Shown piece by piece: positions 1 to 57,138 of a stretch of 64,000 nt of DNA. Position 1 is the stretch's first letter. Each line of letters opens with the position of its first letter. Under the pieces are notes generated by a model. It had not been told where the DNA came from and searched no databases. It saw only the letters and a list, made by a program, of their open reading frames with translations. Location of the stretch: positions 124,001 through 188,000 of IMG/VR virus record IMGVR_UViG_3300033143_006101; one strand, written 5' to 3'. The position numbers were made by a program, and so were the translations under genes.

Positions 1-23
1 TTTTTTATTAAGGAGGAAGTATT

Positions 24-365
24 ATGACAGAGATATTAGACAATGGTCTTGAGATAGAAAAGACTTTAGTTGTTAGTACAATTCATATAATGGAAGCTGA
101 CGATGCTTTTTTTACTCAACTTCAAATTGAGCCTTTTAAATTAACACCCCCACTCATTATAGATGATTTAACATATGGTTGGTATATTTATATACCTTCT
201 GATGAGAATGATTTTAATGAGACTTGTAAATCTATTCAAGAAGATACTAGCTTGAGTGATATCTTTTTGGACTTGTTTAAATTAACACGAGAACTTGACT
301 GTCGCTATCTCAAACTAGATAGGGATGGGCCTATCGCACCTGATCTTCCCCAGGGTGATTGGTAA
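24..365 (+). CDS. hypothetical phage protein (DUF5983-like C-terminus)
   Basis: ORF with AGGAGG RBS; motifs 'LVVSTIHI', 'YGWYI' and 'YLKLDRDGP..DLP..DW'. Confidence 0.5.
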   Translation: MTEILDNGLEIEKTLVVSTIHIMEADDAFFTQLQIEPFKLTPPLIIDDLTYGWYIYIPSDENDFNETCKSIQEDTSLSDIFLDLFKLTRELDCRYLKLDRDGPIAPDLPQGDW

Positions 366-423
366 ACAACATGAAAACTTAACCTACAACTGTGGATCCA
401 TAGCAGATGTAGGGTAATTTTTT

Positions 424-633
424 ATGAGGAGGTATTATATATTGACAGATGAGCAACAGAAAAAGTATCTAGAACAGGGTGGTATTCGTTGTCCTTATTG
501 TAATAGTGTAGACATTACAACCACACAACCTGTACAAACTGATATAGGTATTGCTTGGCAGAATATTTGTTGTAACGATTGTACAGAAGAATGGACAGAT
601 GAAAATACTCTTACTAATGTAAAACCAAGTTAG
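424..633 (+). CDS. small zinc-ribbon protein
   Basis: CPYC...CNDC; true start may be the TTG at ~442 after GAGGAGG. Confidence 0.6.
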   Translation: MRRYYILTDEQQKKYLEQGGIRCPYCNSVDITTTQPVQTDIGIAWQNICCNDCTEEWTDENTLTNVKPS

Positions 634-680
634 ATTGATGCTTGCCCTGAGGCAAGCATGAGTTTAATATAGGAGGTAAT

Positions 681-968
681 ATGAATCCATACGAAAAAGA
701 AGGGTATCTTAAACCGGTAATTCCGTATGTTCAAAGAAGTCCCGAAACAGAAAAACTGCATAAAGCAGAAGAGAATATGATAGAAGCTATATTTAAAACA
801 ACACAGGCATTTAGATCAATTTTTAAAACAAAAGGACTCTATCAACATATCTGGAAAGAAGCTTTACCAGAAGTATTAGTACAGGCTCTTGAAGGTTTTG
901 ATAGACCAGCAGCAGAACTTGCAGCTATAGCTTTTCTGGAAAAACAGGGTTATACTATTACAAAATAG
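681..968 (+). CDS. hypothetical protein
   Basis: ORF with AGGAGG RBS after intergenic hairpin. Confidence 0.7.
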   Translation: MNPYEKEGYLKPVIPYVQRSPETEKLHKAEENMIEAIFKTTQAFRSIFKTKGLYQHIWKEALPEVLVQALEGFDRPAAELAAIAFLEKQGYTITK

Positions 969-976
969 GAGGTGCT

Positions 977-1336
977 ATGAAAGTACCCAATAAGAAAAAG
1001 TTAAAGAAGTTAGATGTTTTCAGAGCAACAGATCAACCAGAGGAGTGTAGTCAATGTAGTAGCCGTACTGACTTTGAGAATATAAATGAAATCCAAGAGT
1101 ACCACGAGTGTCTTAATTGCGGTTTTGAATTTATACTTGATCATACAGAGGACTACTATCATGAGTTCTCCGTCACCTTTGACATAGAAAGTACAATGGA
1201 TCCTGACGACATTCCTTATGCAGAATTGATAAGGCTCTGCGGGGATTGGCAGACTACCTGGAGAAAAATCCAGATAGAAATGCTTTCAAATATGAAGATG
1301 GAGACCCTGACAAATAGTATATTCAATATGCGGTAA
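977..1336 (+). CDS. zinc-ribbon hypothetical protein, possible frameshift near 1231
   Basis: CSQC...CLNC; the alternative frame after 1231 reads KALRGLADYLEKNPDRNAFKYEDGDPDK*. Confidence 0.55.
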   Translation: MKVPNKKKLKKLDVFRATDQPEECSQCSSRTDFENINEIQEYHECLNCGFEFILDHTEDYYHEFSVTFDIESTMDPDDIPYAELIRLCGDWQTTWRKIQIEMLSNMKMETLTNSIFNMR

Positions 1337-1385
1337 TTCTATTAATACTTGAATTACTGCACATTTATTATATTAAGGAGGTAAC

Positions 1386-1865
1386 ATGAAATATACAGTA
1401 AAAGCAGTAAAATTTTCACCTGGACATGATAGTTGCTGTATGAATTGTAACCTATATCACGGCAAGAAAAAAATTGCAAGTGTATGGGATGATTCTTATG
1501 GTGGTGGCTATCAGTATACATGGGTATCTGACGAAGAAGAAAAAGAATTTTTAAATCATGTAAAAAGCCAGCCTCAATGGGAATCAGAATTTACTAAAGG
1601 TAAAAAGTTTAATATGACTAATGATATCTATATTCATAGATTAATTAAGCAAGTTGAAAAAGAAAAAGAGGAAAAGAAAAGAATTAAACTGTATGAAAAA
1701 GCAATAGTTGTAATGACTAAAGATGACGACAGCGATTATTCTTATTTTCGCATGCCGAAAGGTAAGACAGTTGCCATGATACCCAAAGAAGTATTACGTA
1801 ATTGGGTATCCGATATTGAGAGAGATTTAAAACCCGATGAATATATTGCTAACACAAACATTTAA
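1386..1865 (+). CDS. hypothetical protein
   Basis: ORF with AAGGAGG RBS. Confidence 0.7.
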   Translation: MKYTVKAVKFSPGHDSCCMNCNLYHGKKKIASVWDDSYGGGYQYTWVSDEEEKEFLNHVKSQPQWESEFTKGKKFNMTNDIYIHRLIKQVEKEKEEKKRIKLYEKAIVVMTKDDDSDYSYFRMPKGKTVAMIPKEVLRNWVSDIERDLKPDEYIANTNI

Positions 1866-1915
1866 CTAACACACCCAAGCTACATGCTTGGGTGTGTTAG
1901 TTAACAGGAGGTACT

Positions 1916-2452
1916 ATGGTAAAAGGAACTAAAACACTTCTCGCCAGAAGAGAAGGTAAAGATTATTTCTTTACATATCTTGTAGAAGATCAAGATGAAA
2001 ATAGTTTGTATGTTCGTGCTTATCCTATAGGCGGTGGACATGAGTTTAAAATTCCCCGCAAAGATATTGTATCTATGGATGCTGTTGTACCAAGAACAAT
2101 AAGAAAGAAGAAAGTAGGATTTGACGAATCTCAATGGGGAATATATGATGCATATGTATTCGATAACAATTATTGGAATGGTTGGTTGCAGCCATTTTTA
2201 GAAAGAGAAGCAGTTAAACAATTTGTTGATGAACAAAATAAATTGGATGAAGATTACACAGACCTTGCATACCGATTTGAAAACAATGTATTATATATTA
2301 ACTATAAAGAGTACGACCAGAGCGAAGAAATAGAAGCTACTACTATTGAGTATGAAGATAAGGAAATCAAAGTATGGGATGTTTCTTTAGGACTATGCTG
2401 GATTGAATGGACCGATGAAGAGTTAGAAAATGAAGGGGGAGAAGATGTATAA
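1916..2452 (+). CDS. hypothetical protein
   Basis: ORF with AGGAGG RBS; 'YWNGWLQP' motif. Confidence 0.7.
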   Translation: MVKGTKTLLARREGKDYFFTYLVEDQDENSLYVRAYPIGGGHEFKIPRKDIVSMDAVVPRTIRKKKVGFDESQWGIYDAYVFDNNYWNGWLQPFLEREAVKQFVDEQNKLDEDYTDLAYRFENNVLYINYKEYDQSEEIEATTIEYEDKEIKVWDVSLGLCWIEWTDEELENEGGEDV

Positions 2453-3209
2453 TTTCCTTGATTTATTCTCTGGTATAGGTGCATTCCCTCTCGGTGCTCA
2501 TTGGGCAGGCATAACTTGGAAGACACATTTCAATTCTGATATTGAATCATATGCTAATGAAATATATCAGAAACGATTTCCTGACAGTATTAATATAGGA
2601 GATATAAAGCAAGCAAACATCAGAGATCTTTTACGAATAACTGGAGATTGGGTTGTTGTTGGTGGCCCTCCCTGTCCTGCTTTTAGTGTAGCAGGAAAAG
2701 GAGGAGGATTTGACCAAGATGATTTATTCTTTGACATGTTCAAAGTATGTGAAAAGATACAACCCAAGATAATTTTAATTGAGAATGTAGAAGGATTTAC
2801 AAAGTGGAAGGAGGTATTACATAATGAGATCGAAGCTATTGGATACGAGTGGGCGGACGCCATCATTGATGCAAGGGATTTTGGAATCCCTCAAGCAAGA
2901 AGAAGGTACTTTGCAATCTGTATTCGACGAGGAAACTTGTCTGGTACACAACATATATGGAGGGTTCAAGGAGAAGAAAGTAAGAGTATTCATGGATTAC
3001 TCTCCAACTTTACGAACTCCGAAAGGCGGTGGACACCTACCATCAAAACTAAAGACGGATGGAGAGATGTCTTCGCTAACGCCAGAAGAGTGCGAGCAAA
3101 TACAAGGACTCCCCATAGGATGGACCGACTCAGATGCATAGGTAATTCAATACCACCTCAGATGACAGGTGTAATATTTCTATATTTAAAACTTAAAGGA
3201 TTTTTATAG
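2445..3209 (+). CDS. C5 cytosine DNA methyltransferase, alpha subunit (motifs I-VIII and X)
   Basis: DLFSGIG (I), GPPCPAFS (IV), ENVEG (VI), PQARRR (VIII), RLRCIGNSIPP (X); motif IX absent in this frame. Confidence 0.9.
   Translation: MYNFLDLFSGIGAFPLGAHWAGITWKTHFNSDIESYANEIYQKRFPDSINIGDIKQANIRDLLRITGDWVVVGGPPCPAFSVAGKGGGFDQDDLFFDMFKVCEKIQPKIILIENVEGFTKWKEVLHNEIEAIGYEWADAIIDARDFGIPQARRRYFAICIRRGNLSGTQHIWRVQGEESKSIHGLLSNFTNSERRWTPTIKTKDGWRDVFANARRVRANTRTPHRMDRLRCIGNSIPPQMTGVIFLYLKLKGFL
2824..3141 (+). CDS. C5 methyltransferase beta subunit, nested in alternative frame (motif IX)
   Basis: SPTLRT (TRD TL-like) and LTPEECEQIQGLPIGWTD (motif IX); own RBS AAGGAGG at ~2808. Confidence 0.75.
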   Translation: MRSKLLDTSGRTPSLMQGILESLKQEEGTLQSVFDEETCLVHNIYGGFKEKKVRVFMDYSPTLRTPKGGGHLPSKLKTDGEMSSLTPEECEQIQGLPIGWTDSDA

Positions 3210-3256
3210 AAATGCTCTAGCCCGTTTGGGTTAGAGTATCTTTATAAGGAGGTATT

Positions 3257-3484
3257 ATGAGTTCTAAAATAGACAAGGAGAGGACCCAAGAGAGGGTATC
3301 GAACCTTAGATTAAGTATTCTTGATCAAGCAACCATTATACAATTACCTAAAAAATATAAAGTGGAACTATATAAGCATTCCCCCATTGCTTTTATTACT
3401 AATAAGGAAAATGGGAAAAGAACGGTAGTTCCTGTAGTTTCATTAAAGGATGTTAAACGAGCACTGTTAGAATTAGATGTGTAA
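3257..3484 (+). CDS. hypothetical protein
   Basis: ORF with AAGGAGG RBS. Confidence 0.65.
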   Translation: MSSKIDKERTQERVSNLRLSILDQATIIQLPKKYKVELYKHSPIAFITNKENGKRTVVPVVSLKDVKRALLELDV

Positions 3485-3541
3485 AATTAGTGTTGGATCC
3501 ATAACAGGTCCAGCACCAATTTTATTAGGAGGTGTAACTAA

Positions 3542-4420
3542 ATGTTATTAACTAATAGTTACTTTTCAGGTGCGGGATTATTTGAGATAGGACTCCAGCA
3601 AGGAGGACTAGCACTCCAGCAAAGCTTTGAACTTGATGAGAAGTGCTGCAATACCCACAAGCATAATTTTAATCATGCAGTAGTACAATCAGATATTACA
3701 CAGAAGTTAGCATCAGAGGAGAAAGAGTGTGATGTAATGGTTGCAACTTATCCTTGTAATAAATATTCACCCATTGCTGATATACATGGGGCACGTACCG
3801 GAGACGATTTGTTTCTACATTTCTTCAGGCATATAGCTTTGAAGAAGCCTGAGATTTATGTTGTAGAGAATGTACCCGGGATGAAAAAGTTTCCAGTAGT
3901 TATGGAAGCAATGACTAAACTACCTGATTATTATGTATCAGTATTCTGCCCAGTTGAAACCGAAAATTGGTTACCACAACGCAGGAAGAGATTGATACTG
4001 ATTGGTTCAAGACAGCACTTTCAATGGAGAGAACCAGAACAAGAAAAGAGAATTAAGCTAAAGGATATCTTAGAAGAGAATCCAGAAGTTAATATAGTCA
4101 AAGCTATTGGACAGAGAATGTCCGGTAAATATAGGGACATGCCTATCATTAGTGATCCTAAGAAGGATGATATAGCTCCCACTTGTGTAGCTCATTACTC
4201 TAAAGATTTATCTACTCGTCTTGTGAAAGATGATAGATATGAGTATGGAGTAAGACCATACAGTGTACGTGAGTACGCGAGATTGCAAGGAGTTCCTGAT
4301 TGGTTTGAGTTTACTGGAACAGCAGTCCAGAACTACAAAATGATTGGCAATGGAGTTCCCGTACCTATAGGCGAATGGGTAGCCAGAGAGTTACTCAGAT
4401 ACAAAAAACATAAGATGTAA
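3542..4420 (+). CDS. C5 cytosine DNA methyltransferase (single chain)
   Basis: SYFSGAG, YPCNKYS, ENVPG, PQRRKR, SVREYARLQGVP, IGNGVP. Confidence 0.92.
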   Translation: MLLTNSYFSGAGLFEIGLQQGGLALQQSFELDEKCCNTHKHNFNHAVVQSDITQKLASEEKECDVMVATYPCNKYSPIADIHGARTGDDLFLHFFRHIALKKPEIYVVENVPGMKKFPVVMEAMTKLPDYYVSVFCPVETENWLPQRRKRLILIGSRQHFQWREPEQEKRIKLKDILEENPEVNIVKAIGQRMSGKYRDMPIISDPKKDDIAPTCVAHYSKDLSTRLVKDDRYEYGVRPYSVREYARLQGVPDWFEFTGTAVQNYKMIGNGVPVPIGEWVARELLRYKKHKM

Positions 4421-4474
4421 TTTTATAGGGCTCCAGGATTCCCGGAGCTTTACAAACATTATAAAGGAGGCAAC

Positions 4475-4687
4475 ATGAATTTTATAGAAGTAAAATCGTC
4501 TAACATAGCATCAATTGGACATGACCCAATGACAAAGAAGATGCAAATAATATTTACTAATAGTTCTGTGTATCAATATGATGATGTAACAAAAGATGTA
4601 TTTAATGCATTTGTTAATGCTCCTTCTGTTGGAAGATACTTTCATCAGAATATAAGAAATGCATACACGAACACAAAGATCTCTTAA
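4475..4687 (+). CDS. KTSC domain protein
   Basis: VKSSNIASIGHD...YQYDDV...APSVGRYFHQNIR. Confidence 0.9.
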   Translation: MNFIEVKSSNIASIGHDPMTKKMQIIFTNSSVYQYDDVTKDVFNAFVNAPSVGRYFHQNIRNAYTNTKIS

Positions 4688-4746
4688 AGTATTAGCTATG
4701 GATCCATAGTTAGATCCATAGTCATCACTCTAATTAAGGAGGAGCC

Positions 4747-4986
4747 ATGGATATTATAGGCCAGAAGATTAAAAATGTTCGACACATGACTAAAAAAGAA
4801 TATGAGTATAATGGCTGGGAACCAAATGGGTATGATCCACCAATGGTTATTGTGCTGGAGGATGGCACGTGCCTTTATCCCTCACAAGATTATGAGGGAA
4901 AAGGTCCAGGTGCTATCTTTGGACATAGCCCTAAAGAGAAAGACCCCGAGAAAAAATTCTTTGTCTTATATATAGACAAAAAATAA
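4747..4986 (+). CDS. hypothetical protein
   Basis: ORF with RBS; 'LYPSQDYEGKGPGAIF'. Confidence 0.7.
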   Translation: MDIIGQKIKNVRHMTKKEYEYNGWEPNGYDPPMVIVLEDGTCLYPSQDYEGKGPGAIFGHSPKEKDPEKKFFVLYIDKK

Positions 4987-5040
4987 GTTTTACGAGACTC
5001 TATTCAATAGGGCCTCGCAAGATTTAAATAGGAGGAAGGT

Positions 5041-5502
5041 ATGATACAATATTCTATAAATGAAGAAGTGTGTCCTCACTGTGGAAGTGAAGACATTGAT
5101 AGTATATCACACAAACAAACTGAAGAACATTTGCAGTATCATTATAAATGTAATCAGTGTGGTGAGAAATATCTAAACTTATATACAATTAACTATCACG
5201 GTACACTATATGATGCACCACTTACATATGATGATATAAAACCACCACTCGAATATGAAGATTGTGACTGGTGGTTCTCTATGGACTTACGTCATGCATA
5301 TCCTAATAAAGAATTAGAGTATGGAAATAATACTATCGGTGATATTATAAAGAAGAAACTAAACAGAACTAAACTCAAAGGTAAGTTTGAATTAGACACT
5401 GAATATTCTTGTCTCTATATCTACTTCAAAACACAAGAGGACGGAAATTATTTCATCGATTGGATGAATAAACAACACAGTAAAAAGAAACAAATTGTAT
5501 AA
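5041..5502 (+). CDS. zinc-ribbon hypothetical protein
   Basis: CPHC...CNQC. Confidence 0.65.
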   Translation: MIQYSINEEVCPHCGSEDIDSISHKQTEEHLQYHYKCNQCGEKYLNLYTINYHGTLYDAPLTYDDIKPPLEYEDCDWWFSMDLRHAYPNKELEYGNNTIGDIIKKKLNRTKLKGKFELDTEYSCLYIYFKTQEDGNYFIDWMNKQHSKKKQIV

Positions 5503-5553
5503 GTTTTACAGGAGCCAAAAGGTTCCTGCAAGATTTAAATAAGAGGTAATAAT

Positions 5554-6135
5554 ATGAATATTAATTGGTCACTATGGGAGGTACCCAAACAGAAACACAG
5601 TTCTGCTAACACTTCGATCAATAAAACTCGTGTACCCAAGTTGTTCAAGGTGATAAAAGATAAATTTGGATGGGGATACTTACAATGGAACTTTGATATT
5701 GGTTCTGGTAAGTATATTGATACCATACGGGACTATTTACGAGAACAGTCCACCCAACTTTACTATTATGACCCATTCACAATTGACTGGGAAGATAACA
5801 GAAGAAACCTTATCACCTGTGCTACCAAAGGCGGGGCACACACAGTCACTGTTAGTAACGTGTTGAATGTTATCAAGGAGAAGAGGAATCAAACCCGAGT
5901 AATACAACAAGCACATGTTATGTTAAGACCCGGACCTAGAATAACTTCTGATGGTCGTATGGTTCCTAGCACAGCTTACTTCTCCGTGTACTCTAAACAA
6001 GGATGTGGTGTTGGTGAAGAGACTAAACCTGACTGTTGGCAGTCTAACAAAACAATACACGAATATCTCCCAGAAGTAAAAAAGATCTTTGGTAACGTAG
6101 CGATCAAGTATGGTATAATTATAGCAACCAAGTAA
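5554..6135 (+). CDS. putative class I SAM-dependent methyltransferase-like protein
   Basis: FDIGSGKY (SAM motif I-like), YDPF, SNVLNVI. Confidence 0.6.
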   Translation: MNINWSLWEVPKQKHSSANTSINKTRVPKLFKVIKDKFGWGYLQWNFDIGSGKYIDTIRDYLREQSTQLYYYDPFTIDWEDNRRNLITCATKGGAHTVTVSNVLNVIKEKRNQTRVIQQAHVMLRPGPRITSDGRMVPSTAYFSVYSKQGCGVGEETKPDCWQSNKTIHEYLPEVKKIFGNVAIKYGIIIATK

Positions 6136-6187
6136 ACGTAAGCTAACTCTATATTAGAGTTGGCTCATTTTTATTTAGGAGGATCTT

Positions 6188-6370
6188 ATGATAACAAACA
6201 CTGAAGTCAAAACTATCACCCCGATCAGTTATAATATTTGTCCTCATTGTAACACGGTGCAATTTATATATATAATATCTTATATTAAAAACAAACAAAA
6301 AGGTATTGTAATAGGTTGTAAACAATGCATAAAAGATCGAACAGAGATAAACATTAAAAAACAGTCTTAA
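6188..6370 (+). CDS. small Cys-rich protein
   Basis: CPHC...GCKQC; AGGAGG RBS. Confidence 0.55.
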   Translation: MITNTEVKTITPISYNICPHCNTVQFIYIISYIKNKQKGIVIGCKQCIKDRTEINIKKQS

Positions 6371-6417
6371 GCCTGTTTAAAATAGACAGGCTTAATATTA
6401 TTTTAGGAGGTAATATT

Positions 6418-6615
6418 ATGTTAGCTATAGGAACAGTAACAAACGTAACAGCAACAGGATTAAATTCAGTAGAATTACAACGTAATGGAAAAATATTAGG
6501 AACATGGAATTGTGATGTGAACATTCCTTATCCACATCTATATAGATTTGAAGAACAAGATCAATTCTGTTACCCAGTAGATTTAAATACTATAGAACAA
6601 CAAATGGAGGACTAA
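6418..6615 (+). CDS. hypothetical protein
   Basis: ORF with AGGAGG RBS. Confidence 0.6.
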   Translation: MLAIGTVTNVTATGLNSVELQRNGKILGTWNCDVNIPYPHLYRFEEQDQFCYPVDLNTIEQQMED

Positions 6616-6616
6616 T

Positions 6617-6994
6617 ATGACTGAACTTACATTTACTAAAAGAGTCATAACCCAACTAGAACAATCTTATAGCAAAGAGATTAGTTTAATAAATTATGTT
6701 GAAGATAGGAATTGGGGAATGTTTACAAAAGCTGGTGATAAATCCATAACTAATAAAGCCTTGGGTTTGATTAAGAAATTGGAGAAGGCTAAAACAACAA
6801 CTCAAAAGTTTAATGCTCTTACAGCATTCTTACGCTCGTATCGTCGAATGGGCTCCACTAAAACAATGAGTGAAGCATCTGATACAGCTGTTAGAGAATG
6901 TGTAGGATCCTTCTTTGACAAAGTTTGTATTGCAGTTGGCATAGGCCAAAGCACTGCTGATGAAATTTGGGAAAGTCCTGAGAGTGGTTATTAA
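6617..6994 (+). CDS. hypothetical protein
   Basis: ORF with GGAGG RBS. Confidence 0.7.
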   Translation: MTELTFTKRVITQLEQSYSKEISLINYVEDRNWGMFTKAGDKSITNKALGLIKKLEKAKTTTQKFNALTAFLRSYRRMGSTKTMSEASDTAVRECVGSFFDKVCIAVGIGQSTADEIWESPESGY

Positions 6995-7047
6995 AATACC
7001 CTAGCCCCTTCCAGGGGTCTGGGCAATTTAATAAAGGAGATGATATT

Positions 7048-7072
7048 AAAAAACCCTTCCGTTAGGAAGGGT
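7048..7072 (-). terminator. intrinsic terminator
   Basis: acccttcc-taac-ggaagggt followed by T-run on minus strand. Confidence 0.75.
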
Positions 7073-7152
7073 CTACCCGTTTATCTCACAATCTCGGAAA
7101 CAGGAGGTTTCGGTTTGTAAGCGGGACAATATCACAAGAGAATTTTGAGTTA
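7048..7152 (-). ncRNA. candidate ~105-nt small RNA with anti-SD (CCUCCU) hairpin
   Basis: Flanked by a TTGACT-17-TATATT promoter and an intrinsic terminator; no ORF; hairpin gaaac-CUCCU-guuuc. Confidence 0.55.
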
Positions 7153-7159
7153 TATATAA

Positions 7160-7188
7160 AATATAATGGGACATAAGATAAAAGTCAA
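7160..7188 (-). promoter_or_regulatory. sigma70-type promoter
   Basis: TTGACT-17 bp-TATATT. Confidence 0.6.
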
Positions 7189-7241
7189 CAATTTTTTTCA
7201 TTTTGTATAAAAAAATAAGTAACTTTTTTGTGGTTTTTTTG

Positions 7242-7269
7242 TTGACAAATCGCTTATTTTTTTTATATT
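7242..7269 (+). promoter_or_regulatory. sigma70-type promoter (divergent from previous)
   Basis: TTGACA-16 bp-TATATT with AT-rich upstream region. Confidence 0.6.
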
Positions 7270-7352
7270 AATAGGTGACATATAAAAAGAATGGAGATGC
7301 TGGTCACAAACTAGCAACATTATATTAATTTAAATTTAATAGGAGGGTAATT

Positions 7353-7856
7353 ATGAGCAAATTACCTGAACCTACTATAGACACAGTTAAGTCTAGAGTA
7401 GAAACGAATCTGCTTAATGATGGGTTTTTGCATCCATATGCTATTCTATGCACATTTAAAGATAAAAATGTTGGAGTGGGAATAAGCACTCCTCATAATA
7501 CAGATACAAAAACAATTAATGTATCTAGATTATTGGTAGCTTTAGATCAAATTGAGACATATAAAGTATTATTGATACATGAAGCATGGAAATATATTAA
7601 ACCAGATAACATGGATGAAACAGAATTTGCAGAAACTATGAAAGACAAAGCGATGTGTGAATTCTTAGATAAGAGAGAAGGATATATGATAACTGAGGTA
7701 ACAAGAGACAGTGTTAAGACAGGCGTAAGAGAATATCATAAAACAGAATATGATACTATAGGTTTTGTGGGAGATTTACTAATCACTAATGATAATGAAA
7801 AAGCATCTCCTTATGGATATGAGCAGATCCAGGATAAATTAGTAACAAGAAATTAA
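7353..7856 (+). CDS. hypothetical protein
   Basis: ORF with AGGAGG RBS downstream of promoter. Confidence 0.7.
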   Translation: MSKLPEPTIDTVKSRVETNLLNDGFLHPYAILCTFKDKNVGVGISTPHNTDTKTINVSRLLVALDQIETYKVLLIHEAWKYIKPDNMDETEFAETMKDKAMCEFLDKREGYMITEVTRDSVKTGVREYHKTEYDTIGFVGDLLITNDNEKASPYGYEQIQDKLVTRN

Positions 7857-7918
7857 GTTACATGAACGGTTGGACGCAGGAGGGTTCGATTCCCTCCCGT
7901 TTGAATGGAGGTAAATAT

Positions 7919-9319
7919 ATGATTATAGGAAAAGGTTCAAAAAACATAACATTATTTACCCAAATGGCTAATCGCCATGGGATTGTTTCAGGAGCAACAG
8001 GAACTGGGAAAACAGTCTCACTGCAAGTAATTACAGAACAATTTAGCAAAGCTGGAGTACCAGTCTTCTTAGTTGATGTAAAAGGAGACTTGGCCGGTAT
8101 AGCTAAAAGGGGGCAACTACAAGATAAAGTTAAAGAAAGAGTACAAGAACTCGAGATGACAACATTTAAAACTGAGGCGTGCCCGGTTATATTCTGGGAC
8201 ATGTTTGGAGATAATGGTCATCCAATCAGAGCATCTATTTCTGATATGGGATCATTATTGCTAGGCAGACTGTTAAGTTTGAGCCCAACCCAAGTAGGAA
8301 CACTTACACAAATATTTAAAATAGCAGAAGATTATGATTTGCCTTTGATAAAGTTGAGAGATCTTCAATCAGTAGCACAATACGTTGAACTCTTTGCAAA
8401 GGATTTTGCAGAAGAATATGGAAAAATATCAACAGCAAGTATTGGTGCAATCTTAAGAGGATTGCTAGTACTGGAAACTGAAGAGGTTAATAAACTCTTT
8501 GGAGAACCCAAACTTAGGATACTTGATCTGATGAGAATGAAAGATGGTAGAGGAATAGTAAATATCCTCTCAGCAGAAAAACTTATTACTAAACCAAAAG
8601 TATATACGACCTTCTTACTGTGGTTGTTATCAGAATTGTATACTAAATTACCTGAAGTGGGAGACAGAGAAAAACCTCAATTAGTGTTCTTCTTTGATGA
8701 AGCACACCTTCTCTTTGAGGACGCACCTAAAGTACTACTTGAAAAAGTAGAACAAGTTATTAGACTGATAAGGTCTAAAGGTGTTGGTATATTCTTTGTT
8801 ACCCAAAGTCCAGCAGATATTCCTACGAATGTCTTAGGACAACTTGGTAATAGAGTACAGCATGCTCTAAGAGCTTATACTCCTAAAGATTCTAAAGCAG
8901 TAAGAATAATGGCACAGACATTTAGAAGTAATCCTAAAATAAATGTCGAGCAAGCTATTACTCAACTGAAAGTAGGAGAAGCTCTAGTATCATTATTAGA
9001 TGAAAATGGTACACCTGAAATTGTTGAACGAGTTTTGATGCATCCACCATCAAGTCAAATAGGTCCAATTAGTAATGAAGAAAGAGCACAACTAATGAAG
9101 TGCTCCCCTTTGCATGAAGTATATGAAAGAGAGATCAATGCTAAAGCAGCATATCACATTATTAAAAACATACGCGAAGAGCAAAAGAGAGAAACACAAT
9201 TAAAACCGAAAACCAGAAAAGGGAAGCAACCAGAAAATCTAATGGAAACAGTAATGAATACCTTTGCAAAATCAAACAGTTCATCACTAGGAAGTAAGAT
9301 CTTTAAGTTGTTAAAATGA
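7919..9319 (+). CDS. HerA/FtsK-like ATPase, DUF853 (YjgR-like)
   Basis: ANRHGIVSGATGTGKT, DVKGDL, FFDEAHLLF, RLIRSKGVG, LGNRVQHALRA; start at ATG after GGAGG. Confidence 0.92.
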   Translation: MIIGKGSKNITLFTQMANRHGIVSGATGTGKTVSLQVITEQFSKAGVPVFLVDVKGDLAGIAKRGQLQDKVKERVQELEMTTFKTEACPVIFWDMFGDNGHPIRASISDMGSLLLGRLLSLSPTQVGTLTQIFKIAEDYDLPLIKLRDLQSVAQYVELFAKDFAEEYGKISTASIGAILRGLLVLETEEVNKLFGEPKLRILDLMRMKDGRGIVNILSAEKLITKPKVYTTFLLWLLSELYTKLPEVGDREKPQLVFFFDEAHLLFEDAPKVLLEKVEQVIRLIRSKGVGIFFVTQSPADIPTNVLGQLGNRVQHALRAYTPKDSKAVRIMAQTFRSNPKINVEQAITQLKVGEALVSLLDENGTPEIVERVLMHPPSSQIGPISNEERAQLMKCSPLHEVYEREINAKAAYHIIKNIREEQKRETQLKPKTRKGKQPENLMETVMNTFAKSNSSSLGSKIFKLLK

Positions 9320-11064: not shown

Positions 11065-11252
11065 CAGGAGGTTTTATGAGAATAGAATATCATAAACCAA
11101 ACACATATGAAAGGAGGAGGAGAGCGAACTTCTGGTTAAGTACAGGAAGTTTTCTTGCTTCAACCGCAGTTTCATATTTAGTATTATTAGTTGGTCTTGC
11201 TATTGCAACTATAACATTAGTTATAATTCTAGCTAACAAATAGGAGGTAAGC

Positions 11253-16627: not shown

Positions 16628-17383
16628 CTATTTTCTTCCATAATTATATGACACAACTCTCCCTGTACTTGATAGTACATATTCTGAGAACATATTCTCA
16701 TGAAAAAAATACTTCAATTCTTTTTTAATCTTGTTTATGATCTCATAAACTGCATGATATGTTATACCCAATTCTTTACTCAAAGCTGAACATGTAGTGG
16801 ACCCAAGAAATACCTTCAAGCAAACCTCTTTAACTGTAGAACTCCTTGAACTCTTCTCAGATCTCTCCAAGATATAATTGATATATTCATTTTCTAATAT
16901 CTTAGAATCATAATAATCATATACCTTATTTGTCTCATCTAAATCTGGATGAGATAAAGAAGTTTCAATTACCTTGATGTCTACTGGTAAAAAATTGTCT
17001 GACATTACTTTTTCTACCCAGACATACATATGTTGTGGGAGTAATAACTTCATGAAGTAAGAAAAAGATGCAATGTTTTTATCATATCTATATAATAATG
17101 TAAGAAACATTAAATAAGTTTCTTGTAATACATCATTAAATTCCATCCTTTTTTCTACAAAAGGATAATACTTTCCTGCAACTTTCTTTACATACGGTTC
17201 ATACACCTTGACTAAAAAAGCTATAGCATCTTTCGATGGTGTATCCGTTCCCTTCCTTCTTTGTGCGACACTAACCGCTTGCTGTATAATCTTGTATAAC
17301 CTACGTGTTTCTTCTACACTCCTGTTTCCAAAATTGCGACTCAAAACCAATGCTTCCTTATACTTTGATCTCATGAGTCGCAA
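16628..17383 (-). CDS. sigma-70-like RNA polymerase sigma factor
   Basis: region 2 'FNDVLQETYLMFL...YDKNIASFSYF'; C-terminal HTH 'LSKELGITYHAVY'. Confidence 0.75.
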   Translation of the reverse strand: MRLMRSKYKEALVLSRNFGNRSVEETRRLYKIIQQAVSVAQRRKGTDTPSKDAIAFLVKVYEPYVKKVAGKYYPFVEKRMEFNDVLQETYLMFLTLLYRYDKNIASFSYFMKLLLPQHMYVWVEKVMSDNFLPVDIKVIETSLSHPDLDETNKVYDYYDSKILENEYINYILERSEKSSRSSTVKEVCLKVFLGSTTCSALSKELGITYHAVYEIINKIKKELKYFFHENMFSEYVLSSTGRVVSYNYGRK

Positions 17384-18853: not shown

Positions 18854-19101
18854 TCACTAACTCTAGCATACTTAAACATGATACGTGAATTAGAATCCTC
18901 ATTTAAAGGTGGTGATCCCTTTCCAGCCAGGTTATCCTTTGTAAACTGTATACATGTAAGGAGTATCTCTCCTTTAGATAGATACACCCCGAAACGATTA
19001 AACCATAAATCCCTAATAACATCCCGCAAACGTTTGAACTCAGCTATATCAGGTACGTAAATAGACATCCTGCTTCTTGAATAATCTTTAGACACAGTCA
19101 C
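18850..19101 (-). CDS. hypothetical protein
   Basis: ORF tightly coupled in operon. Confidence 0.5.
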   Translation of the reverse strand: MTVSKDYSRSRMSIYVPDIAEFKRLRDVIRDLWFNRFGVYLSKGEILLTCIQFTKDNLAGKGSPPLNEDSNSRIMFKYARVSE

Positions 19102-19741
19102 ATCTATACCCTCTTAGATCTTTCATTACAGACAGCTTCGTTAATCCTTCATTAAAATAATTATATACAGTTGTGTTATGTGTAGCTGAGGAAATGTTTA
19201 GTTGTAATTTAATGTCTTTTATTGTATAACCTTCTAACCACAACAGCATAATATTTCTCTGTAATGAACTAAGCTTTGCTATAGCTCCCTCAAGATCCAT
19301 CTGTAAGATAGTTCTATCCTCATCCCATATAGGTTTTGACATCCCCATATCTTCTGATATAACATTGTTCTCATCCATATCTGCCTGTATTCCATTAACA
19401 CAATTCCAATAATCATACATAGAGATGTCTTTACTTCTGGAAGTCTTTTTAGTATTTAAGGGATGCAGAATATGATTACTTATTTCCTTTCTAACATTGC
19501 GAAAGATAGCCATATTGAGTGGTTCATTGATACGCCTTCCACCAATCCCATTAGCTATCCCAATGTACACATGCTGTCGTACATCATCTTCTTCATAATC
19601 ACAGTTAGAATATTTTTTGCTGAGCTTTTGTACCCAACGCTCATACCTAGCAAAAATTCGGTTAAGTAGTTTGTTTTTAATAAAGTGGTTGGTTGTGCAT
19701 ATATATCTATTGCACAATAGATCTAATTCGTTCCCTATCAT
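19088..19741 (-). CDS. second sigma-70-like factor
   Basis: 'EEDDVRQHVYIG' region 2; 'LSSLQRNIMLLWLEGYTIKDI' region 4. Confidence 0.7.
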   Translation of the reverse strand: MIGNELDLLCNRYICTTNHFIKNKLLNRIFARYERWVQKLSKKYSNCDYEEDDVRQHVYIGIANGIGGRRINEPLNMAIFRNVRKEISNHILHPLNTKKTSRSKDISMYDYWNCVNGIQADMDENNVISEDMGMSKPIWDEDRTILQMDLEGAIAKLSSLQRNIMLLWLEGYTIKDIKLQLNISSATHNTTVYNYFNEGLTKLSVMKDLRGYRCDCV

Positions 19742-28822: not shown

Positions 28823-31402
28823 CTATTTTGTCCATTTATCCAAAACCTCCAAATCTGCCTTCAAACCTATTTCTATATCAGGTATATCTTCAATAAGACT
28901 TTTAACTAACTGAGCACCAACTATCCCAACTTCATGCTCAGGGCAATCAACTAAGATACAATCATGAACAACACCTACAATCTTTGCTAATTTATTCGTA
29001 CTATCTATCCATTTCTGTAATCTTATTAAACCAAAATTTGTAATGTCACTTGCGGTTGCTTGGATGGGCATATTTGTTGCTTGACGAAGAGCCCCTTCCC
29101 TAACTTTAGTATCAGTACTATACACCTTAGATAAATATCGACGACGACCATGTGCACTTTCTACATAACCATATTCTATAGCAAATCTTTCAACAGCCTT
29201 AAGCCACTGCTTTGCTCCACTATATAAATTAAACCAGCTGTCGATAAACTTCTGTGCTTTTGAGGTACTCTCATGTCTTTCAATAGATGTGTCCATAGGG
29301 TACCCAAGTTGTGTAGCTAAAGAAAATGCGGATAACCCGTACACAATTCCGAAGTTAATCGTTTTTGCTATTGTCCTAGCTTTCATATGCTTTTCATTAT
29401 TCTTATCAAATTGTTCATAAGAAATATGAAGAAGAGCATTACAAGCTGTTGCAGCATGAATATCATGATCAGCTTTAAATGCTTTAATCATTTCCACATC
29501 ACCAGAGAACATTGCCAATACTCTAAGCTCTGCCTGCCCTAAATCTGCAGCCAAAAGTTTATTACCAGGAGCAGGAATAATCATATTACGTATCCTATTA
29601 TCTCTTGGTACTGTTTGAAGCGGAGGATTAATACAGCTAAGTCTTCCAGTTGCAGTAGTATGTTGTAAGTAACCCGGGTATACTCTTTGAGTATTTGGAT
29701 CCATAAGATCCAAAAACCCATCTATATAAGTCGAGGTCTGTTTATTTATTTTCCTATACTCTAAGATATTTGCAAGTTCGGGATAGGTTTCGGCATAATA
29801 CTTTATTGCAGCTTCATTAAGAGAAGGATCTCCTTTAGGAGTTTTAAACTTATCACTTTTCGTAATCTTTAATTTATTAAAAACAAATTTTCTTAATTGT
29901 GGTGCAGAATTTATATCAAATTGCCCTCCATTTCTTGCATATATTAATTCCTCTATTTCTGCAGCTCTACTGTTATTCTCTTTTTTGACTTTCTCCATAT
30001 GAGCAACATCTATACGTATCCCATTTTCCTCTATACGAAGTAAAGTATTAGCTAAAGGCATTATCAGATGATAAAATAAATTATTATATGTTTTACCAAT
30101 CTCAGCAACCTGTTGTTGATAGATACGAAATGTTACATCAGAATCTAACGCAGAGTAATAAGGTACCGGTGGTAATCCACTCCTCTTTAACCTTGCCTGT
30201 TTCTTGTCTTCCACATACATTGCATAATTATCAAACTCAGTTCTTTCAATAGGTGCATCCTTTTTCTTCTTAGTCTTTTGTTTCTTTTGTGTAGCAACAA
30301 TACCTCCTTCACCCAGAATATCTTCATAACCACCAAGAGGAGTATGTGTCCAAGCCATGGTCTTTAGCTTATAAAGACCTATAACCTCTCTACCCTCATA
30401 ACTCATTGTTGTAGTGTGTTCAGCATACAGCGTATCAAAACCAAAATTATTAATAGTTAAACCAACTGCTCTTAAGAACTTCACATCAAACACACCATTA
30501 TGAAATACTTTAACAATACTTGGATGACTTAGTATTTGATTTAACAAATCAAAAAATGGAAGTATATCCTCCCATTTAATATGTACTCCTTTACCTGATT
30601 CAATACAAAAAGAAATGTGTGTGATTCTATTCTCCCTTGGATTCAATCCATCAGTTTCTATATCCATTGCTATTAAAGAAGAATCCAGTAACCGATTAAG
30701 ATATGCTTTAATTTCTATTGGATCAGACAGTGATACAGGAGTAGCTTCAAGCAATCTTGTCTTAGGTTCATATGCCAATTTCCTGGCCATTAATATATCT
30801 TCTTCAAACTGTTGATATATCAATGCATCTTGCCGATAGCCTAAATACATGGGGTGATAAGTTGTTACTATAGTACATTCTAATTCTGGATGATAGAATT
30901 GTTTACCGCGTGCAATGGTCATAGCTAAACCTAGACCAAGCATTTGATCCATAGCTGTTTTTCCTAACGTAAGTATTACTTTAGGTTTTATTTCATCGAT
31001 AAGTTTATAAGTAAAAGTACGACAGCATTTAATTTGGGTAGGAGTAGGTTTTTTATTTTTACCTTCTTTATCAGTAGGTCTGCATTTAACAGAATTAGTT
31101 ATAAAACAATCTATATTGTGTTGATTTAATTTATTTTGAAGGATACTACCAGCTTTCCCTATAAAAACATTCCCATCTTTATCTTCATTAGCTCCCGGGG
31201 CTTCACCAACAATTAATAAAGGTGCTTCTTTATTTCCACGCCCCTCAATATAGGGAGTCTTTACTCGTTTATATAACCCACATTTTTTACAGTATGCATT
31301 ACTAAACAACTCACTCAACATCTGTTCACGTACACTTAATCTAATACCTGTCGGAACAGATCTAACCGCCTTTATATCAATCATAATGCTCTCCAAAGTC
31401 AT
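28823..31402 (-). CDS. polA: family A DNA polymerase with N-terminal family-4 uracil-DNA glycosylase domain
   Basis: VGEAPGANED, NSVKCRP, TYHP (UDG4); DIETDG, FHNGVFD (exonuclease); TATGRLS, DLGQAELR, RTIAKTINFGIVYG, VHD (polymerase). Confidence 0.95.
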   Translation of the reverse strand: MTLESIMIDIKAVRSVPTGIRLSVREQMLSELFSNAYCKKCGLYKRVKTPYIEGRGNKEAPLLIVGEAPGANEDKDGNVFIGKAGSILQNKLNQHNIDCFITNSVKCRPTDKEGKNKKPTPTQIKCCRTFTYKLIDEIKPKVILTLGKTAMDQMLGLGLAMTIARGKQFYHPELECTIVTTYHPMYLGYRQDALIYQQFEEDILMARKLAYEPKTRLLEATPVSLSDPIEIKAYLNRLLDSSLIAMDIETDGLNPRENRITHISFCIESGKGVHIKWEDILPFFDLLNQILSHPSIVKVFHNGVFDVKFLRAVGLTINNFGFDTLYAEHTTTMSYEGREVIGLYKLKTMAWTHTPLGGYEDILGEGGIVATQKKQKTKKKKDAPIERTEFDNYAMYVEDKKQARLKRSGLPPVPYYSALDSDVTFRIYQQQVAEIGKTYNNLFYHLIMPLANTLLRIEENGIRIDVAHMEKVKKENNSRAAEIEELIYARNGGQFDINSAPQLRKFVFNKLKITKSDKFKTPKGDPSLNEAAIKYYAETYPELANILEYRKINKQTSTYIDGFLDLMDPNTQRVYPGYLQHTTATGRLSCINPPLQTVPRDNRIRNMIIPAPGNKLLAADLGQAELRVLAMFSGDVEMIKAFKADHDIHAATACNALLHISYEQFDKNNEKHMKARTIAKTINFGIVYGLSAFSLATQLGYPMDTSIERHESTSKAQKFIDSWFNLYSGAKQWLKAVERFAIEYGYVESAHGRRRYLSKVYSTDTKVREGALRQATNMPIQATASDITNFGLIRLQKWIDSTNKLAKIVGVVHDCILVDCPEHEVGIVGAQLVKSLIEDIPDIEIGLKADLEVLDKWTK

Positions 31403-48853: not shown

Positions 48854-48989
48854 TCGGGGAAGAAGGAGTTGAACCTTCGACATTCAGTTTCCAAATGCTT
48901 GTAAGATAATATTATGGGAACCTAAAAGGTTCAAGTTATACCATCTAGAAAACAACACACTGAGACTCTACCTACTGAGCTATTCCCCG
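48854..48989 (-). ncRNA. Y RNA-like 4: tRNA-Pro-like body with 63-nt Y module inserted in the anticodon loop
   Basis: CGGGGAA/UUCCCCG-A acceptor, D and T arms intact; insert 48896-48958 contains AACUUGAACC-uuuu-aGGUUCC and UACAAGC; UUUGGAA precedes the 3' anticodon strand. Confidence 0.8.
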
Positions 48990-56975: not shown

Positions 56976-57004
56976 TTGACAGATATATTAATTTATATTA
57001 TATT
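56976..57004 (+). promoter_or_regulatory. sigma70-type promoter
   Basis: TTGACA-17 bp-TATATT. Confidence 0.65.
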
Positions 57005-57010
57005 GACCTA

Positions 57011-57086
57011 TCTATCATATATTTGACACTCCAAGTTGAATTATATGCCTATTTTGACTGAATCCCTTCTCCGGAAGGGATTTTTT
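57011..57086 (+). ncRNA. candidate ~75-nt small RNA
   Basis: between promoter and terminator; hairpin with ACUCCAA loop; no ORF. Confidence 0.45.
57061..57086 (+). terminator. intrinsic terminator
   Basis: aatcccttc-tccg-gaagggatt followed by T-run. Confidence 0.8.
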
Positions 57087-57108
57087 CGTTTGTAACATAA
57101 AAAAAAAG

Positions 57109-57138
57109 TTGACATTATACAGCTATCCAATGTATATT
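57109..57138 (+). promoter_or_regulatory. sigma70-type promoter for the PP2C-NadE-PncB-kinase unit
   Basis: TTGACA-18 bp-TATATT. Confidence 0.6.

What the first reader, a model, noticed from the sequence alone, without database searches (positions are those of the whole stretch)
7048..7188. Antisense-oriented sRNA gene with CCUCCU in an apical loop at the end of the early cassette array
Seen: own promoter (TTGACT-17-TATATT), intrinsic terminator, no ORF, and a long stem topped by gaaac-CUCCU-guuuc. AAACCUCCUGUU is complementary over 12 nt to the RBS at ~11063 (aacaggaggttt) and over 10-11 nt to those at ~1903 and ~33851. Inference: a trans-acting RBS-blocking sRNA for phage or host mRNAs.
Basis: partly seen in the sequence, partly recalled or inferred. 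Interest (0 to 1): 0.6.

Follow-up and report, generated by a model that had tools for sequence, protein, structure and literature searches.

The report
Phage small RNA with anti-ribosome-site loop
An uncultivated 253-kb phage carries a likely ~105-base non-coding RNA gene, with its own promoter and terminator, that exposes the sequence CUCCU (the complement of ribosome-binding sites); one distant relative keeps the same unit at the same place, but expression and targets are untested.

Summary
A minus-strand TTGACT-17-TATATT promoter (7188-7160) is followed by a ~106-nt stretch with no ribosome-site-led ORF. This stretch folds into a long hairpin with CUCCU in a 5-nt apical loop (7106-7102), then a 10-bp terminator with T6 (7074-7048).

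Two results make a real gene likely:
- **Promoter family.** TTGACN-N16-18-TATATT occurs 10 times in the 252,876-bp phage genome, against about 1 expected. All ten are intergenic and most follow an A- or T-rich tract. Two others precede tRNA genes and three precede other short units without a ribosome-site-led ORF.
- **Syntenic relative.** The only distant relative whose contig keeps this spacer (L021) has the same unit at the same place: TTGACA-17-TATATT, a ~104-nt ORF-less RNA, an unpaired CCUCCU and a terminator.

The specific targets are not supported. A 12-nt match arises in 11-15% of random-flank controls, and AACAGGAGGT is simply a common ribosome-site context in this phage.

No RNA data could be obtained and Rfam has no matching family. 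My best reading is a host-polymerase-transcribed phage sRNA that pairs with Shine-Dalgarno regions. A cis or insulator role is the main rival. It is a new member of a known kind, of moderate interest.

The parts
7192..7198 (-). A-tract directly upstream of the -35 box (UP-element-like)
   Evidence: Read. Most of the ten family promoters follow an A- or T-rich tract.
7183..7188 (-). -35 hexamer TTGACT
   Evidence: One of 10 genome-wide TTGACN-N16-18-TATATT sites, against 1.05 expected.
7160..7165 (-). -10 hexamer TATATT, 17-nt spacer
   Evidence: All ten family members use TATATT and none uses TATAAT.
7048..7153 (-). Predicted ~106-nt non-coding RNA. The start (~7153, an A 7 nt after the -10 box) and the 3' end (in the T-run 7053-7048) are inferred, not mapped.
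   Evidence: Fold (z = -3.4). No SD-led ORF. No Pfam or PHROG hit for the overlapping frames.
7126..7153 (-). Unpaired A/U-rich 5' segment, containing UUCUCUUGUGA
   Evidence: A similar block, UUCUUCUUGUAA, occurs in the L021 unit.
7076..7125 (-). Stem-loop 1, a long imperfect hairpin
   Evidence: -13.7 kcal/mol, z = -2.7. One U-G pair on this strand becomes a C-A mismatch on the plus strand (read).
7102..7107 (-). CCUCCU anti-Shine-Dalgarno motif. CUCCU (7106-7102) forms the 5-nt apical loop.
   Evidence: unpaired probability 0.97-1.0; opening cost 2.8 kcal/mol. AACCUCCU(G/A)UUU is shared with the L021 unit.
7048..7074 (-). Intrinsic terminator: 10-bp stem 7074-7051, T6 at 7053-7048
   Evidence: -15.2 kcal/mol, z = -3.5. 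On the plus strand no T-run follows it.
6993..7016 (-). Second, weaker minus-strand terminator-like hairpin with TATTTT, abutting the stop codon of the plus-strand gene 6617-6994
7242..7269 (+). Divergent partner promoter TTGACA-16-TATATT, which drives the operon starting at 7353 (167-aa protein, HerA-like ATPase and following genes)
   Evidence: The divergent arrangement is kept in L021.

Best explanation
Window 7188-7048 (minus strand) is a stand-alone gene for a ~105-nt non-coding RNA of an uncultivated 253-kb phage.

Host RNA polymerase with its primary sigma factor starts at one of ten consensus phage promoters (A-tract, TTGACN, 17 nt, TATATT). It stops at a strong intrinsic terminator 50 nt before the neighbouring plus-strand gene. 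The RNA presents CCUCCU, the sequence of the anti-Shine-Dalgarno tail of 16S rRNA, in an accessible position.

The most likely action is base pairing with the AGGAGG Shine-Dalgarno region of one or a few mRNAs, phage or host. Pairing would start at the loop and extend by opening the weak A-U stem top, so that the 30S subunit cannot bind.

- **Shown:** the sequence signals, the fold, the absence of an ORF, membership of the promoter family, and recurrence of the unit in one syntenic relative.
- **Inferred:** transcription itself, early timing, the pairing mechanism and every target.
For: **Promoter**
- TTGACN-N16-18-TATATT occurs 10 times against 1.05 expected. All ten are intergenic and all have TATATT.
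- The other members precede protein operons, the tRNA cluster (window 49385, minus) and another tRNA.
- The sRNA promoter aligns best to the tRNA-cluster promoter.

**Polymerase**
- The genome has no Pfam-detectable RNAP beta or beta' subunit, and three weak sigma-like ORFs. This fits use of host polymerase and an early sigma-A promoter class.

**Terminator and fold**
-.
- The loop is fully unpaired.

**Non-coding**
-.

**Conservation**
- L021 has neighbour proteins 37% and 50% identical in the same order.
- It carries, divergent from the operon, TTGACA-17-TATATT, a ~104-nt ORF-less RNA, a CCUCCU unpaired with probability ~0.9, and a terminator. The fold z-score is -3.7.
- In neither phage does a start codon with an ORF follow the plus-strand AGGAGG.
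- From the counts, non-RBS AGGAGG occurs about once per 5 kb per strand. Its chance presence in the L021 unit is therefore roughly 1.5%.

**Flanks**
- The motif's flanks match phage RBS contexts somewhat more often than random flanks do: 4 matches of 11 nt or more against ~0.7 expected.

**Known precedent**
- C/U-rich loops that pair with SD regions are an established sRNA mechanism in low-GC Gram-positive bacteria (PMC2790875, PMC4132741, PMC3868564).
Against:
- There is only one comparator sequence.
- Outside the terminator the two units do not align significantly (z = 0.9).
- The structural setting of the motif differs between the two: an apical loop here, a single-stranded linker in L021. 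No covariation test is therefore possible.
- Target specificity is unsupported.
- A perfect anti-SD would also fit the phage's own 121 AGGAGG-bearing start sites, so a global action would hurt the phage itself.
- The plus strand folds at least as well (-17.4 against -13.7 kcal/mol).
- RBSs sitting in small palindromes are common in this genome, so a CCUCCU-topped hairpin could be the mirror image of an RBS-like element.
Confidence: 0.45

Rival explanations
1. The unit acts in cis as an insulator or antisense unit. It exists to fire polymerases and RNA against plus-strand read-through coming from the upstream gene array. Convergent transcription, and a ~100-bp duplex with the read-through RNA that RNase III could cleave, would uncouple the array from the operon that has its own promoter at 7242. 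On this reading the CCUCCU is incidental.
For: - Every gene in window 1-6600 is followed by a hairpin plus T-run. The last gene (6617-6994) has no plus-strand terminator: both hairpins after it carry their T-runs on the minus strand only.
- This is the only family promoter that points against its gene block.
- Two tandem minus-strand terminators stop the RNA before it would run antisense into 6617-6994.
Against: - A plus-strand terminator would do the same job more simply, and the array uses them everywhere else.
- This reading does not explain why an accessible CCUCCU is kept in L021 while the surrounding sequence has diverged.
- The left flank of L021 is missing, so the read-through context cannot be compared.
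Confidence: 0.2
2. The hairpin is a relic or by-product. It is the mirror image of a decayed plus-strand ribosome-binding site from a lost gene. The minus-strand transcript, if made, has no function of its own, and the promoter serves only as an UP-element or divergent partner of the 7242 promoter.
For: - GGAAACAGGAGGTTTC looks like a typical RBS of this phage. AACAGGAGGT occurs at 5 real RBSs, and many RBSs sit in small AT-rich palindromes.
- The plus strand folds slightly better.
- On the plus strand AGGAGG is followed, after 7 nt, by TTG then TAA.
Against: - The promoter and terminator orientation, the transcript length (~106 against ~104 nt) and the motif are all kept in a relative with 37-50% protein identity. 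A neutral relic should have decayed over that distance.
- Neither phage has an ORF after the plus-strand AGGAGG.
- The U-G pair in the stem favours the minus strand.
Confidence: 0.12
3. The RNA is a decoy or mimic of the 3' tail of 16S rRNA. ACCUCCU-N-UUU resembles the rRNA tail ACCUCCUUUCU (rRNA sequence from general knowledge). On this reading it titrates a factor that recognises that tail, such as a host nuclease, toxin or ribosome-associated protein, or it competes with ribosomes for SD sequences in general.
For: The block shared by the two units is AACCUCCU(G/A)UUU. It is unpaired in both folds.
Against: This is purely a resemblance. No partner protein is identified, and one motif per RNA is a weak sponge. 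The host and its rRNA sequence are unknown.
Confidence: 0.08
4. The region encodes a small peptide: the 42-aa minus frame 7201-7073, the 20-codon GTG frame inside the transcript, or the 26-aa plus frame 7040-7120.
For: The open frames exist. A weak sub-threshold Rfam match to the Phe leader covers 7202-7045 on the minus strand (30.2 bits against a gathering score of 55).
Against: - None has a usable SD, in a genome where 121 starts carry AGGAGG.
- The 42-aa frame begins upstream of the -35 box.
- There are no family hits.
- None of these frames is kept in L021, where all frames are 23 codons or fewer and lack an SD.
Confidence: 0.03

Closest known systems
C/U-rich-loop sRNAs of low-GC Gram-positive bacteria: the S. 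aureus Rsa RNAs and RNAIII with the UCCC motif (PMC2790875), Listeria LhrC (PMC4132741), and the icaR 3'UTR anti-SD motif UCCCCUG (PMC3868564)
   Same: A short, intrinsically terminated RNA that presents a pyrimidine-rich anti-SD sequence in an unpaired loop or linker. The proposed action is occlusion of the SD and start region. It occurs in an AT-rich genome with strong AGGAGG sites.
   Different: - It is encoded by a large virulent-type phage rather than a bacterium.
- It has one motif, and that motif is the full CCUCCU rather than UCCC.
- It has no sequence or Rfam relationship to these RNAs.
- No target has been demonstrated.
Phage antisense RNAs that block a ribosome-binding site: c4 RNA of P1/P7 (summarised in PMC12197685) and sar RNA of P22 (from general knowledge)
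   Same: A phage-encoded small RNA whose exposed loop sequence pairs with an RBS to block translation.
   Different: Those RNAs act on a defined neighbouring gene (ant) in temperate phages of enterobacteria. Here no overlapping or adjacent target gene exists, and the seed is a generic anti-SD.
Lambda OOP RNA (from general knowledge): a 77-nt RNA with its own promoter and terminator, antisense to the end of cII, whose effect depends on RNase III
   Same: A small, self-contained, antisense-oriented transcription unit inside a block of genes on the other strand.
   Different: OOP overlaps a coding region. This RNA lies wholly in a 358-bp spacer and ends ~50 nt before the neighbouring gene's stop codon.
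Recently described trans-acting sRNAs of phages, such as a phage sRNA that targets host replication mRNA (bioRxiv 10.1101/2024.10.31.621285) and prophage sRNAs of EHEC (PMC12197685, PMC13502914)
   Same: A phage-encoded, trans-acting, base-pairing regulator.
   Different: All of those are from Gram-negative systems that use Hfq. None is from a jumbo phage of an AGGAGG-rich, probably Gram-positive, host, and none has a full anti-SD seed.

Membership tests
Independent bacterial-type sRNA gene (generic definition) | Its own promoter on the RNA's strand | tested here: met
   TTGACT-17-TATATT at 7188-7160. It belongs to a 10-member family, against ~1 expected, all intergenic.
Independent bacterial-type sRNA gene (generic definition) | Rho-independent terminator at the 3' end | tested here: met
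   10-bp stem plus T6 at 7074-7048, z = -3.5.
Independent bacterial-type sRNA gene (generic definition) | No translated ORF | tested here: met
   No SD-led frame and no family hits. The same holds in L021.
Independent bacterial-type sRNA gene (generic definition) | Conservation of the unit in relatives | tested here: inconclusive
   One syntenic relative (L021) keeps the promoter, length, CCUCCU and terminator. It is only one sequence, the primary sequence does not align significantly, and no covariation test is possible.
Independent bacterial-type sRNA gene (generic definition) | A detectable discrete transcript | not testable with these tools
Anti-SD (C/U-rich loop) translational repressor sRNAs | Pyrimidine-rich anti-SD motif in an unpaired region | tested here: met
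   CUCCU loop unpaired with probability 0.97-1.0. The L021 motif is unpaired with probability ~0.9.
Anti-SD (C/U-rich loop) translational repressor sRNAs | Extended, specific complementarity to the SD and start region of defined targets | tested here: inconclusive
   Best match 12 nt (gene 11076-11243), P = 0.11-0.15. Matches of 11 nt or more: 4 against ~0.7 expected, P ~0.04. Duplex energies are no better than with randomised flanks.
Anti-SD (C/U-rich loop) translational repressor sRNAs | Sequence or structure homology to RsaE/RoxS, LhrC, RNAIII or any other curated family | tested here: not met
   No Rfam family reaches its gathering score in the window. In a permissive scan of 6950-7360 only sub-threshold chance-level hits appear.
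cis-antisense RNA (OOP or sar type) | Overlap with a gene or RBS on the opposite strand | tested here: not met
   The transcript 7153-7048 lies inside the spacer 6995-7352. The only plus-strand frame under it (7040-7120) has no usable SD and no homologues.
Type I toxin-antitoxin locus | A small hydrophobic toxin ORF opposite or adjacent to the antisense RNA | tested here: not met
   No such ORF exists in 6995-7352. The 55-aa membrane protein with the best match lies 4 kb away.

The most novel reading that the evidence does not exclude
The RNA is the founding member of a conserved class of early, host-polymerase-made small RNAs in a deep-branching lineage of jumbo phages. Its conserved ACCUCCU-N-UUU block mimics the 3' tail of 16S rRNA. 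It would act globally, either by competing with ribosomes for strong Shine-Dalgarno sites or by decoying a factor that attacks or binds the rRNA tail. It would form part of a small RNA regulon that also includes the orphan unit at 56976-57090 and two more elsewhere in the genome.
Probability: 0.1. Interest if true: 0.75.

Novelty: new member of a known kind. Interest (0 to 1): 0.5.

Why it matters
Almost all characterised phage sRNAs come from temperate phages of enterobacteria. Regulatory RNAs of large virulent-type phages of AT-rich, strongly SD-dependent hosts are essentially unknown.

If this RNA is made and acts through its anti-SD sequence, the phage would tune translation initiation with an RNA rather than a protein. 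The target could be the host's mRNAs or its own later genes.

The same analysis gives a defined early promoter class for an uncultivated 253-kb phage, plus three more candidate short orphan transcription units. That makes the question testable with synthetic constructs, even without the phage in culture.

Tried and rejected
**Searches for relatives**
- Close relatives: megablast against GenBank phages found nothing. Scans of IMG/VR with both neighbouring proteins and with the DNA polymerase found nothing. The polymerase is at most 28% identical to any cultured phage.
- A second contig, L014, is 100% identical and so uninformative.
- Three DNA-pattern scans of IMG/VR for the hairpin top or for promoter-plus-motif gave only unrelated RBSs or coding sequence.
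- A scan of JGI metagenomes with the neighbour-protein alignment gave one unrelated high-GC contig.
- Of the distant homologues of the 167-aa protein, L009, L016 and L018 are cut before the spacer. L017, L019, L045, L046 and L048 are not syntenic or have a small gene in the gap. The 90%-identity clusters holding the L009, L016 and L021 proteins are singletons.

**Searches within the genome**
- There is no paralogue of the RNA in the genome; only the promoter resembles the tRNA-cluster promoter.
- The 12-nt match at genome position 193441 lies in the 3' end of a coding region, not at an RBS. The shared ...GGFG peptide ending is a coincidence.

**Ideas rejected**
- The Rfam Phe-leader hit is sub-threshold and has no leader peptide.
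- Generic sigma-70 scoring cannot serve as evidence. Matches of 10 of 12 are no more common between genes than inside them, and their orientation is random.
- Alignment of this RNA with the second orphan unit (56976-57090) shows no homology.

**Not obtained**

Full report
**Context**

The window is bases 124,001-188,000 of a 252,876-bp virus record with direct terminal repeats. It comes from JGI metagenome 3300033143. GC content is about 33%.

Genes have very strong ribosome-binding sites: 121 predicted starts carry AGGAGG. The window holds a replication module with family A DNA polymerase, DnaB, RecA and a tubulin/FtsZ-like protein.

No close relative exists among GenBank phages or in IMG/VR. 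The DNA polymerase is at most 28% identical to Bacillus phage polymerases. The genome has no Pfam-detectable RNA polymerase beta or beta' subunit and has three weak sigma-like ORFs. I infer that the phage uses the host core polymerase.

**The observation**

On the minus strand, reading 5' to 3':
- an A-tract at 7198-7192;
- TTGACT at 7188-7183, a 17-nt spacer, and TATATT at 7165-7160;
- a likely start at about 7153;
- 28 unpaired A/U-rich bases;
- a long imperfect hairpin (7125-7076) whose top is GAAAC-CUCCU-GUUUC, with the loop at 7106-7102;
- a 10-bp G+C-rich hairpin (7074-7051) running into T6 (7053-7048).

A weaker terminator-like hairpin follows at 7016-6999.

The whole RNA folds at -28.9 kcal/mol (z = -3.4). 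Stem-loop 1 alone is -13.7 kcal/mol (z = -2.7) and the terminator is -15.2 kcal/mol (z = -3.5). The loop bases are unpaired with probability 0.97-1.0.

No frame in the transcript has a Shine-Dalgarno sequence. The 42-aa frame starts upstream of the -35 box. None of the small frames on either strand hits Pfam or PHROGs. On the plus strand AGGAGG (7102-7107) is followed, after 7 nt, only by TTG-TAA.

**Is the promoter real?**

A generic sigma-70 score is worthless in this genome. Of 178 matches at 10 of 12 or better, only 22% lie in the 20% of the genome that is non-coding, and their orientation relative to genes is random.

The stricter pattern TTGACN-N16-18-TATA[AT]T behaves differently. It occurs 10 times. 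Every copy has TATATT and none has TATAAT. Every copy lies between genes, and most follow an A- or T-rich tract. Second-order Markov simulations of the genome give a mean of 1.05 copies of TTGACN-N16-18-TATATT and at most 4.

What the other nine members precede:
- five sit in front of protein-coding genes or operons, among them the divergent partner at 7242-7269;
- one is in front of a small RHH-like ORF and the tRNA cluster (window 49385, minus strand);
- one starts a terminated ~200-nt unit just upstream of another tRNA;
- two more start short terminated units without an SD-led ORF.

The promoter of the finding is the only one of the ten that points against its surrounding gene block. Its best match elsewhere in the genome is the tRNA-cluster promoter.

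I conclude that this is a genuine promoter class, probably read by host sigma-A holoenzyme and therefore probably early. The timing is an inference.

**Comparative evidence**

An exhaustive HMMER search with the 167-aa protein encoded next door (7353-7856) found 25 distant homologues. Most of their contigs are cut before the spacer or are not syntenic.

One contig keeps the spacer. L021 (2,183 bp, run SRR26786787) has the 157-aa homologue (37% identical) followed by the HerA-like ATPase (50% identical), in the same order as the window. Upstream of that operon and divergent from it, exactly as in the window, lie:
- TTGACA-17-TATATT at L021 166-138 (minus strand);
- about 104 nt without any SD-led frame;
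- CCUCCU at L021 94-89;
- an 8-bp terminator with a T-run at L021 54-34.

The fold has z = -3.7. The CUCCU lies in a single-stranded linker and is unpaired with probability ~0.9.

The shared blocks are ACTC at +10, AACCTCCT(G/A)TTT, TTGTGA and the GACCC start of the terminator. Otherwise the two RNAs do not align better than shuffled sequence (z = 0.9 without the terminator).

From the counts, non-RBS AGGAGG occurs about once per 5 kb per strand in this genome. Its chance presence in the right strand of a 75-nt stretch is therefore roughly 1.5%. A perfect 11-of-12 family promoter and a terminator in the right order and orientation make coincidence less likely still.

This is the strongest argument that the unit, and the motif within it, are under selection on the minus strand. 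It remains a single comparator, and the structural setting of the motif is not the same in the two RNAs.

**Are the proposed targets special?**

No. RBS position frequencies predict about 2 copies of AACAGGAGGT among 150 GGAGG-type RBSs, and 5 are seen.

| Measure | Native flanks | Random flanks, same composition | P |
|---|---|---|---|
| Longest match to any initiation region | 12 nt | reaches 12 nt in 11-15% of trials | 0.11-0.15 |
| Matches of 11 nt or more | 4 | 0.6-0.75 | ~0.04 |
| Matches of 10 nt or more | 8 | ~2.3 | ~0.07 |

Predicted duplex energies with all initiation regions are no better for the native flanks than for randomised ones.

The top match is the start of a 55-aa protein with one membrane-spanning segment (11076-11243). 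Its holin-like PHROG hit is not significant (E = 0.09).

Many true RBSs in this phage sit in the loop of small AT-rich palindromes, for example TTAACAGGAGGTTAA. The hairpin top therefore looks like the mirror image of a typical RBS. That fits either a seed tuned to the common RBS context or descent from an RBS.

**Mechanism**

The best-supported reading is a host-polymerase-made phage sRNA whose accessible CCUCCU pairs with Shine-Dalgarno regions and blocks 30S binding. This would resemble the UCCC-loop sRNAs of staphylococci and Listeria (PMC2790875, PMC4132741, PMC3868564) and the RBS-blocking c4 RNA of P1/P7 (PMC12197685). I rate the existence of the gene at about 0.8 and this mechanism, given the gene, at about 0.5-0.6.

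The main rival is a cis role. The last gene of the upstream array (6617-6994) is the only one without a plus-strand terminator. Read-through RNA would therefore meet convergent transcription and a perfectly complementary RNA.

A relic RBS, a mimic of the 16S tail and a small peptide are less likely, for the reasons given under the rivals.

**Comparison and novelty**

No Rfam family matches. The review of phage sRNAs that I read has no occurrence of 'jumbo', 'lytic phage' or 'Gram-positive' in its text. My literature searches on phage and jumbo-phage sRNAs turned up no anti-SD-loop example.

The working principle, an anti-SD seed in an unpaired region, is known. The RNA is a new family in a new setting, so I rate it a new member of a known kind.

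**Limits**

- There is no expression evidence.
- There is one comparator sequence and no covariation test.
- The host is unknown.

Noticed in passing
window 56976-57090 (+): A second orphan unit. A family promoter TTGACA-17-TATATT (56976-57004) is followed by a ~80-nt RNA with a hairpin whose 7-nt loop is CACUCCA, then a terminator GAATCCCTTC-TCCG-GAAGGGATTT plus T6 (57060-57083). The fold has z = -4.0, with 0 of 200 shuffles as stable. It sits directly upstream of another family promoter (57109-57138) that drives a 280-codon ORF. It does not align with the finding's RNA.
   Followed up: partly
genome 77440-77700 (+), outside the window (G000:C1): A family promoter is followed, after ~15 nt, by a perfect 18-bp hairpin plus U5 (-29.9 kcal/mol). 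A second terminator lies ~200 nt further on. There is no SD-led ORF, so this is another candidate small RNA or a promoter-proximal terminator.
   Followed up: partly
genome 236949-237260 (+), outside the window: A family promoter with an ATG at about +7, which could be a leaderless ~45-codon frame or a ~200-nt RNA. A very strong terminator follows, then a GGAGATGCTAG motif and a tRNA-like sequence.
   Followed up: no
window 49385-48233 (-): A family promoter drives a small ribbon-helix-helix-like ORF and then the tRNA cluster. ARAGORN tRNAs and Rfam finds 3 tRNA matches. The third Rfam match (48854-48989) is 136 nt long and may carry an insertion or intron. ARAGORN calls one tRNA as tRNA-Asn with the unusual anticodon ATT.
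   Followed up: no
window 1-6620 (+): Every gene of the array is followed by a hairpin and a T-run that runs straight into the next AGGAGG site. None of the sigma-A-type family promoters lies in this stretch, so the array is probably not transcribed from that class. Its 'early' label is unproven.
   Followed up: partly
genome-wide; in the window at about 4698 and 393: An 18-bp palindrome, AACTATGGATCCATAGTT (core ATGGATCCAT), occurs 19 times, 13 of them between genes and often inside the hairpins between cassettes. Its 7-mers are 3-4 times enriched upstream of genes. It may be an operator, a phage-sigma promoter element or a site linked to the phage's DNA methyltransferases.
   Followed up: partly
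window 7293, 57180 and 47909 (-); genome 8016, 90511 (-), 77636 (-), 237205: The motif GGAGATGC(T) occurs 16 times, 7 of them in non-coding DNA. Three of those lie 18-35 nt downstream of family promoters. A near copy, GGAGATGAT, lies at 7036-7044 on the plus strand. Its function is unknown.
   Followed up: no
window 7862-9319 (+): The HerA-like/DUF853 ATPase downstream of the divergent promoter is 53-67% identical to thousands of bacterial proteins. It therefore looks like a cellular gene acquired by this phage lineage. The relatives L009, L016 and L021 keep it next to the 167-aa protein.
   Followed up: partly
window 16628-17383 (-), 19088-19741 (-); genome ~231796 (+): Three ORFs have sub-threshold matches to sigma-70 region 2 or region 4. 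They are candidate phage sigma factors for the middle and late genes.
   Followed up: partly
window 28823-31402 (-): The family A DNA polymerase carries an N-terminal domain of the uracil-DNA-glycosylase superfamily, fused to the 3'-5' exonuclease and polymerase domains.
   Followed up: no
L035 / L039 (IMG/VR contigs of 455 kb and 62 kb): An unrelated huge-phage contig also shows TTGACA-N18-TATATT, then ~56 nt, AACCTCCT and a terminator-like hairpin, with no obvious ORF on the opposite strand. It may be an analogous unit or a self-pairing SD/anti-SD leader.
   Followed up: no
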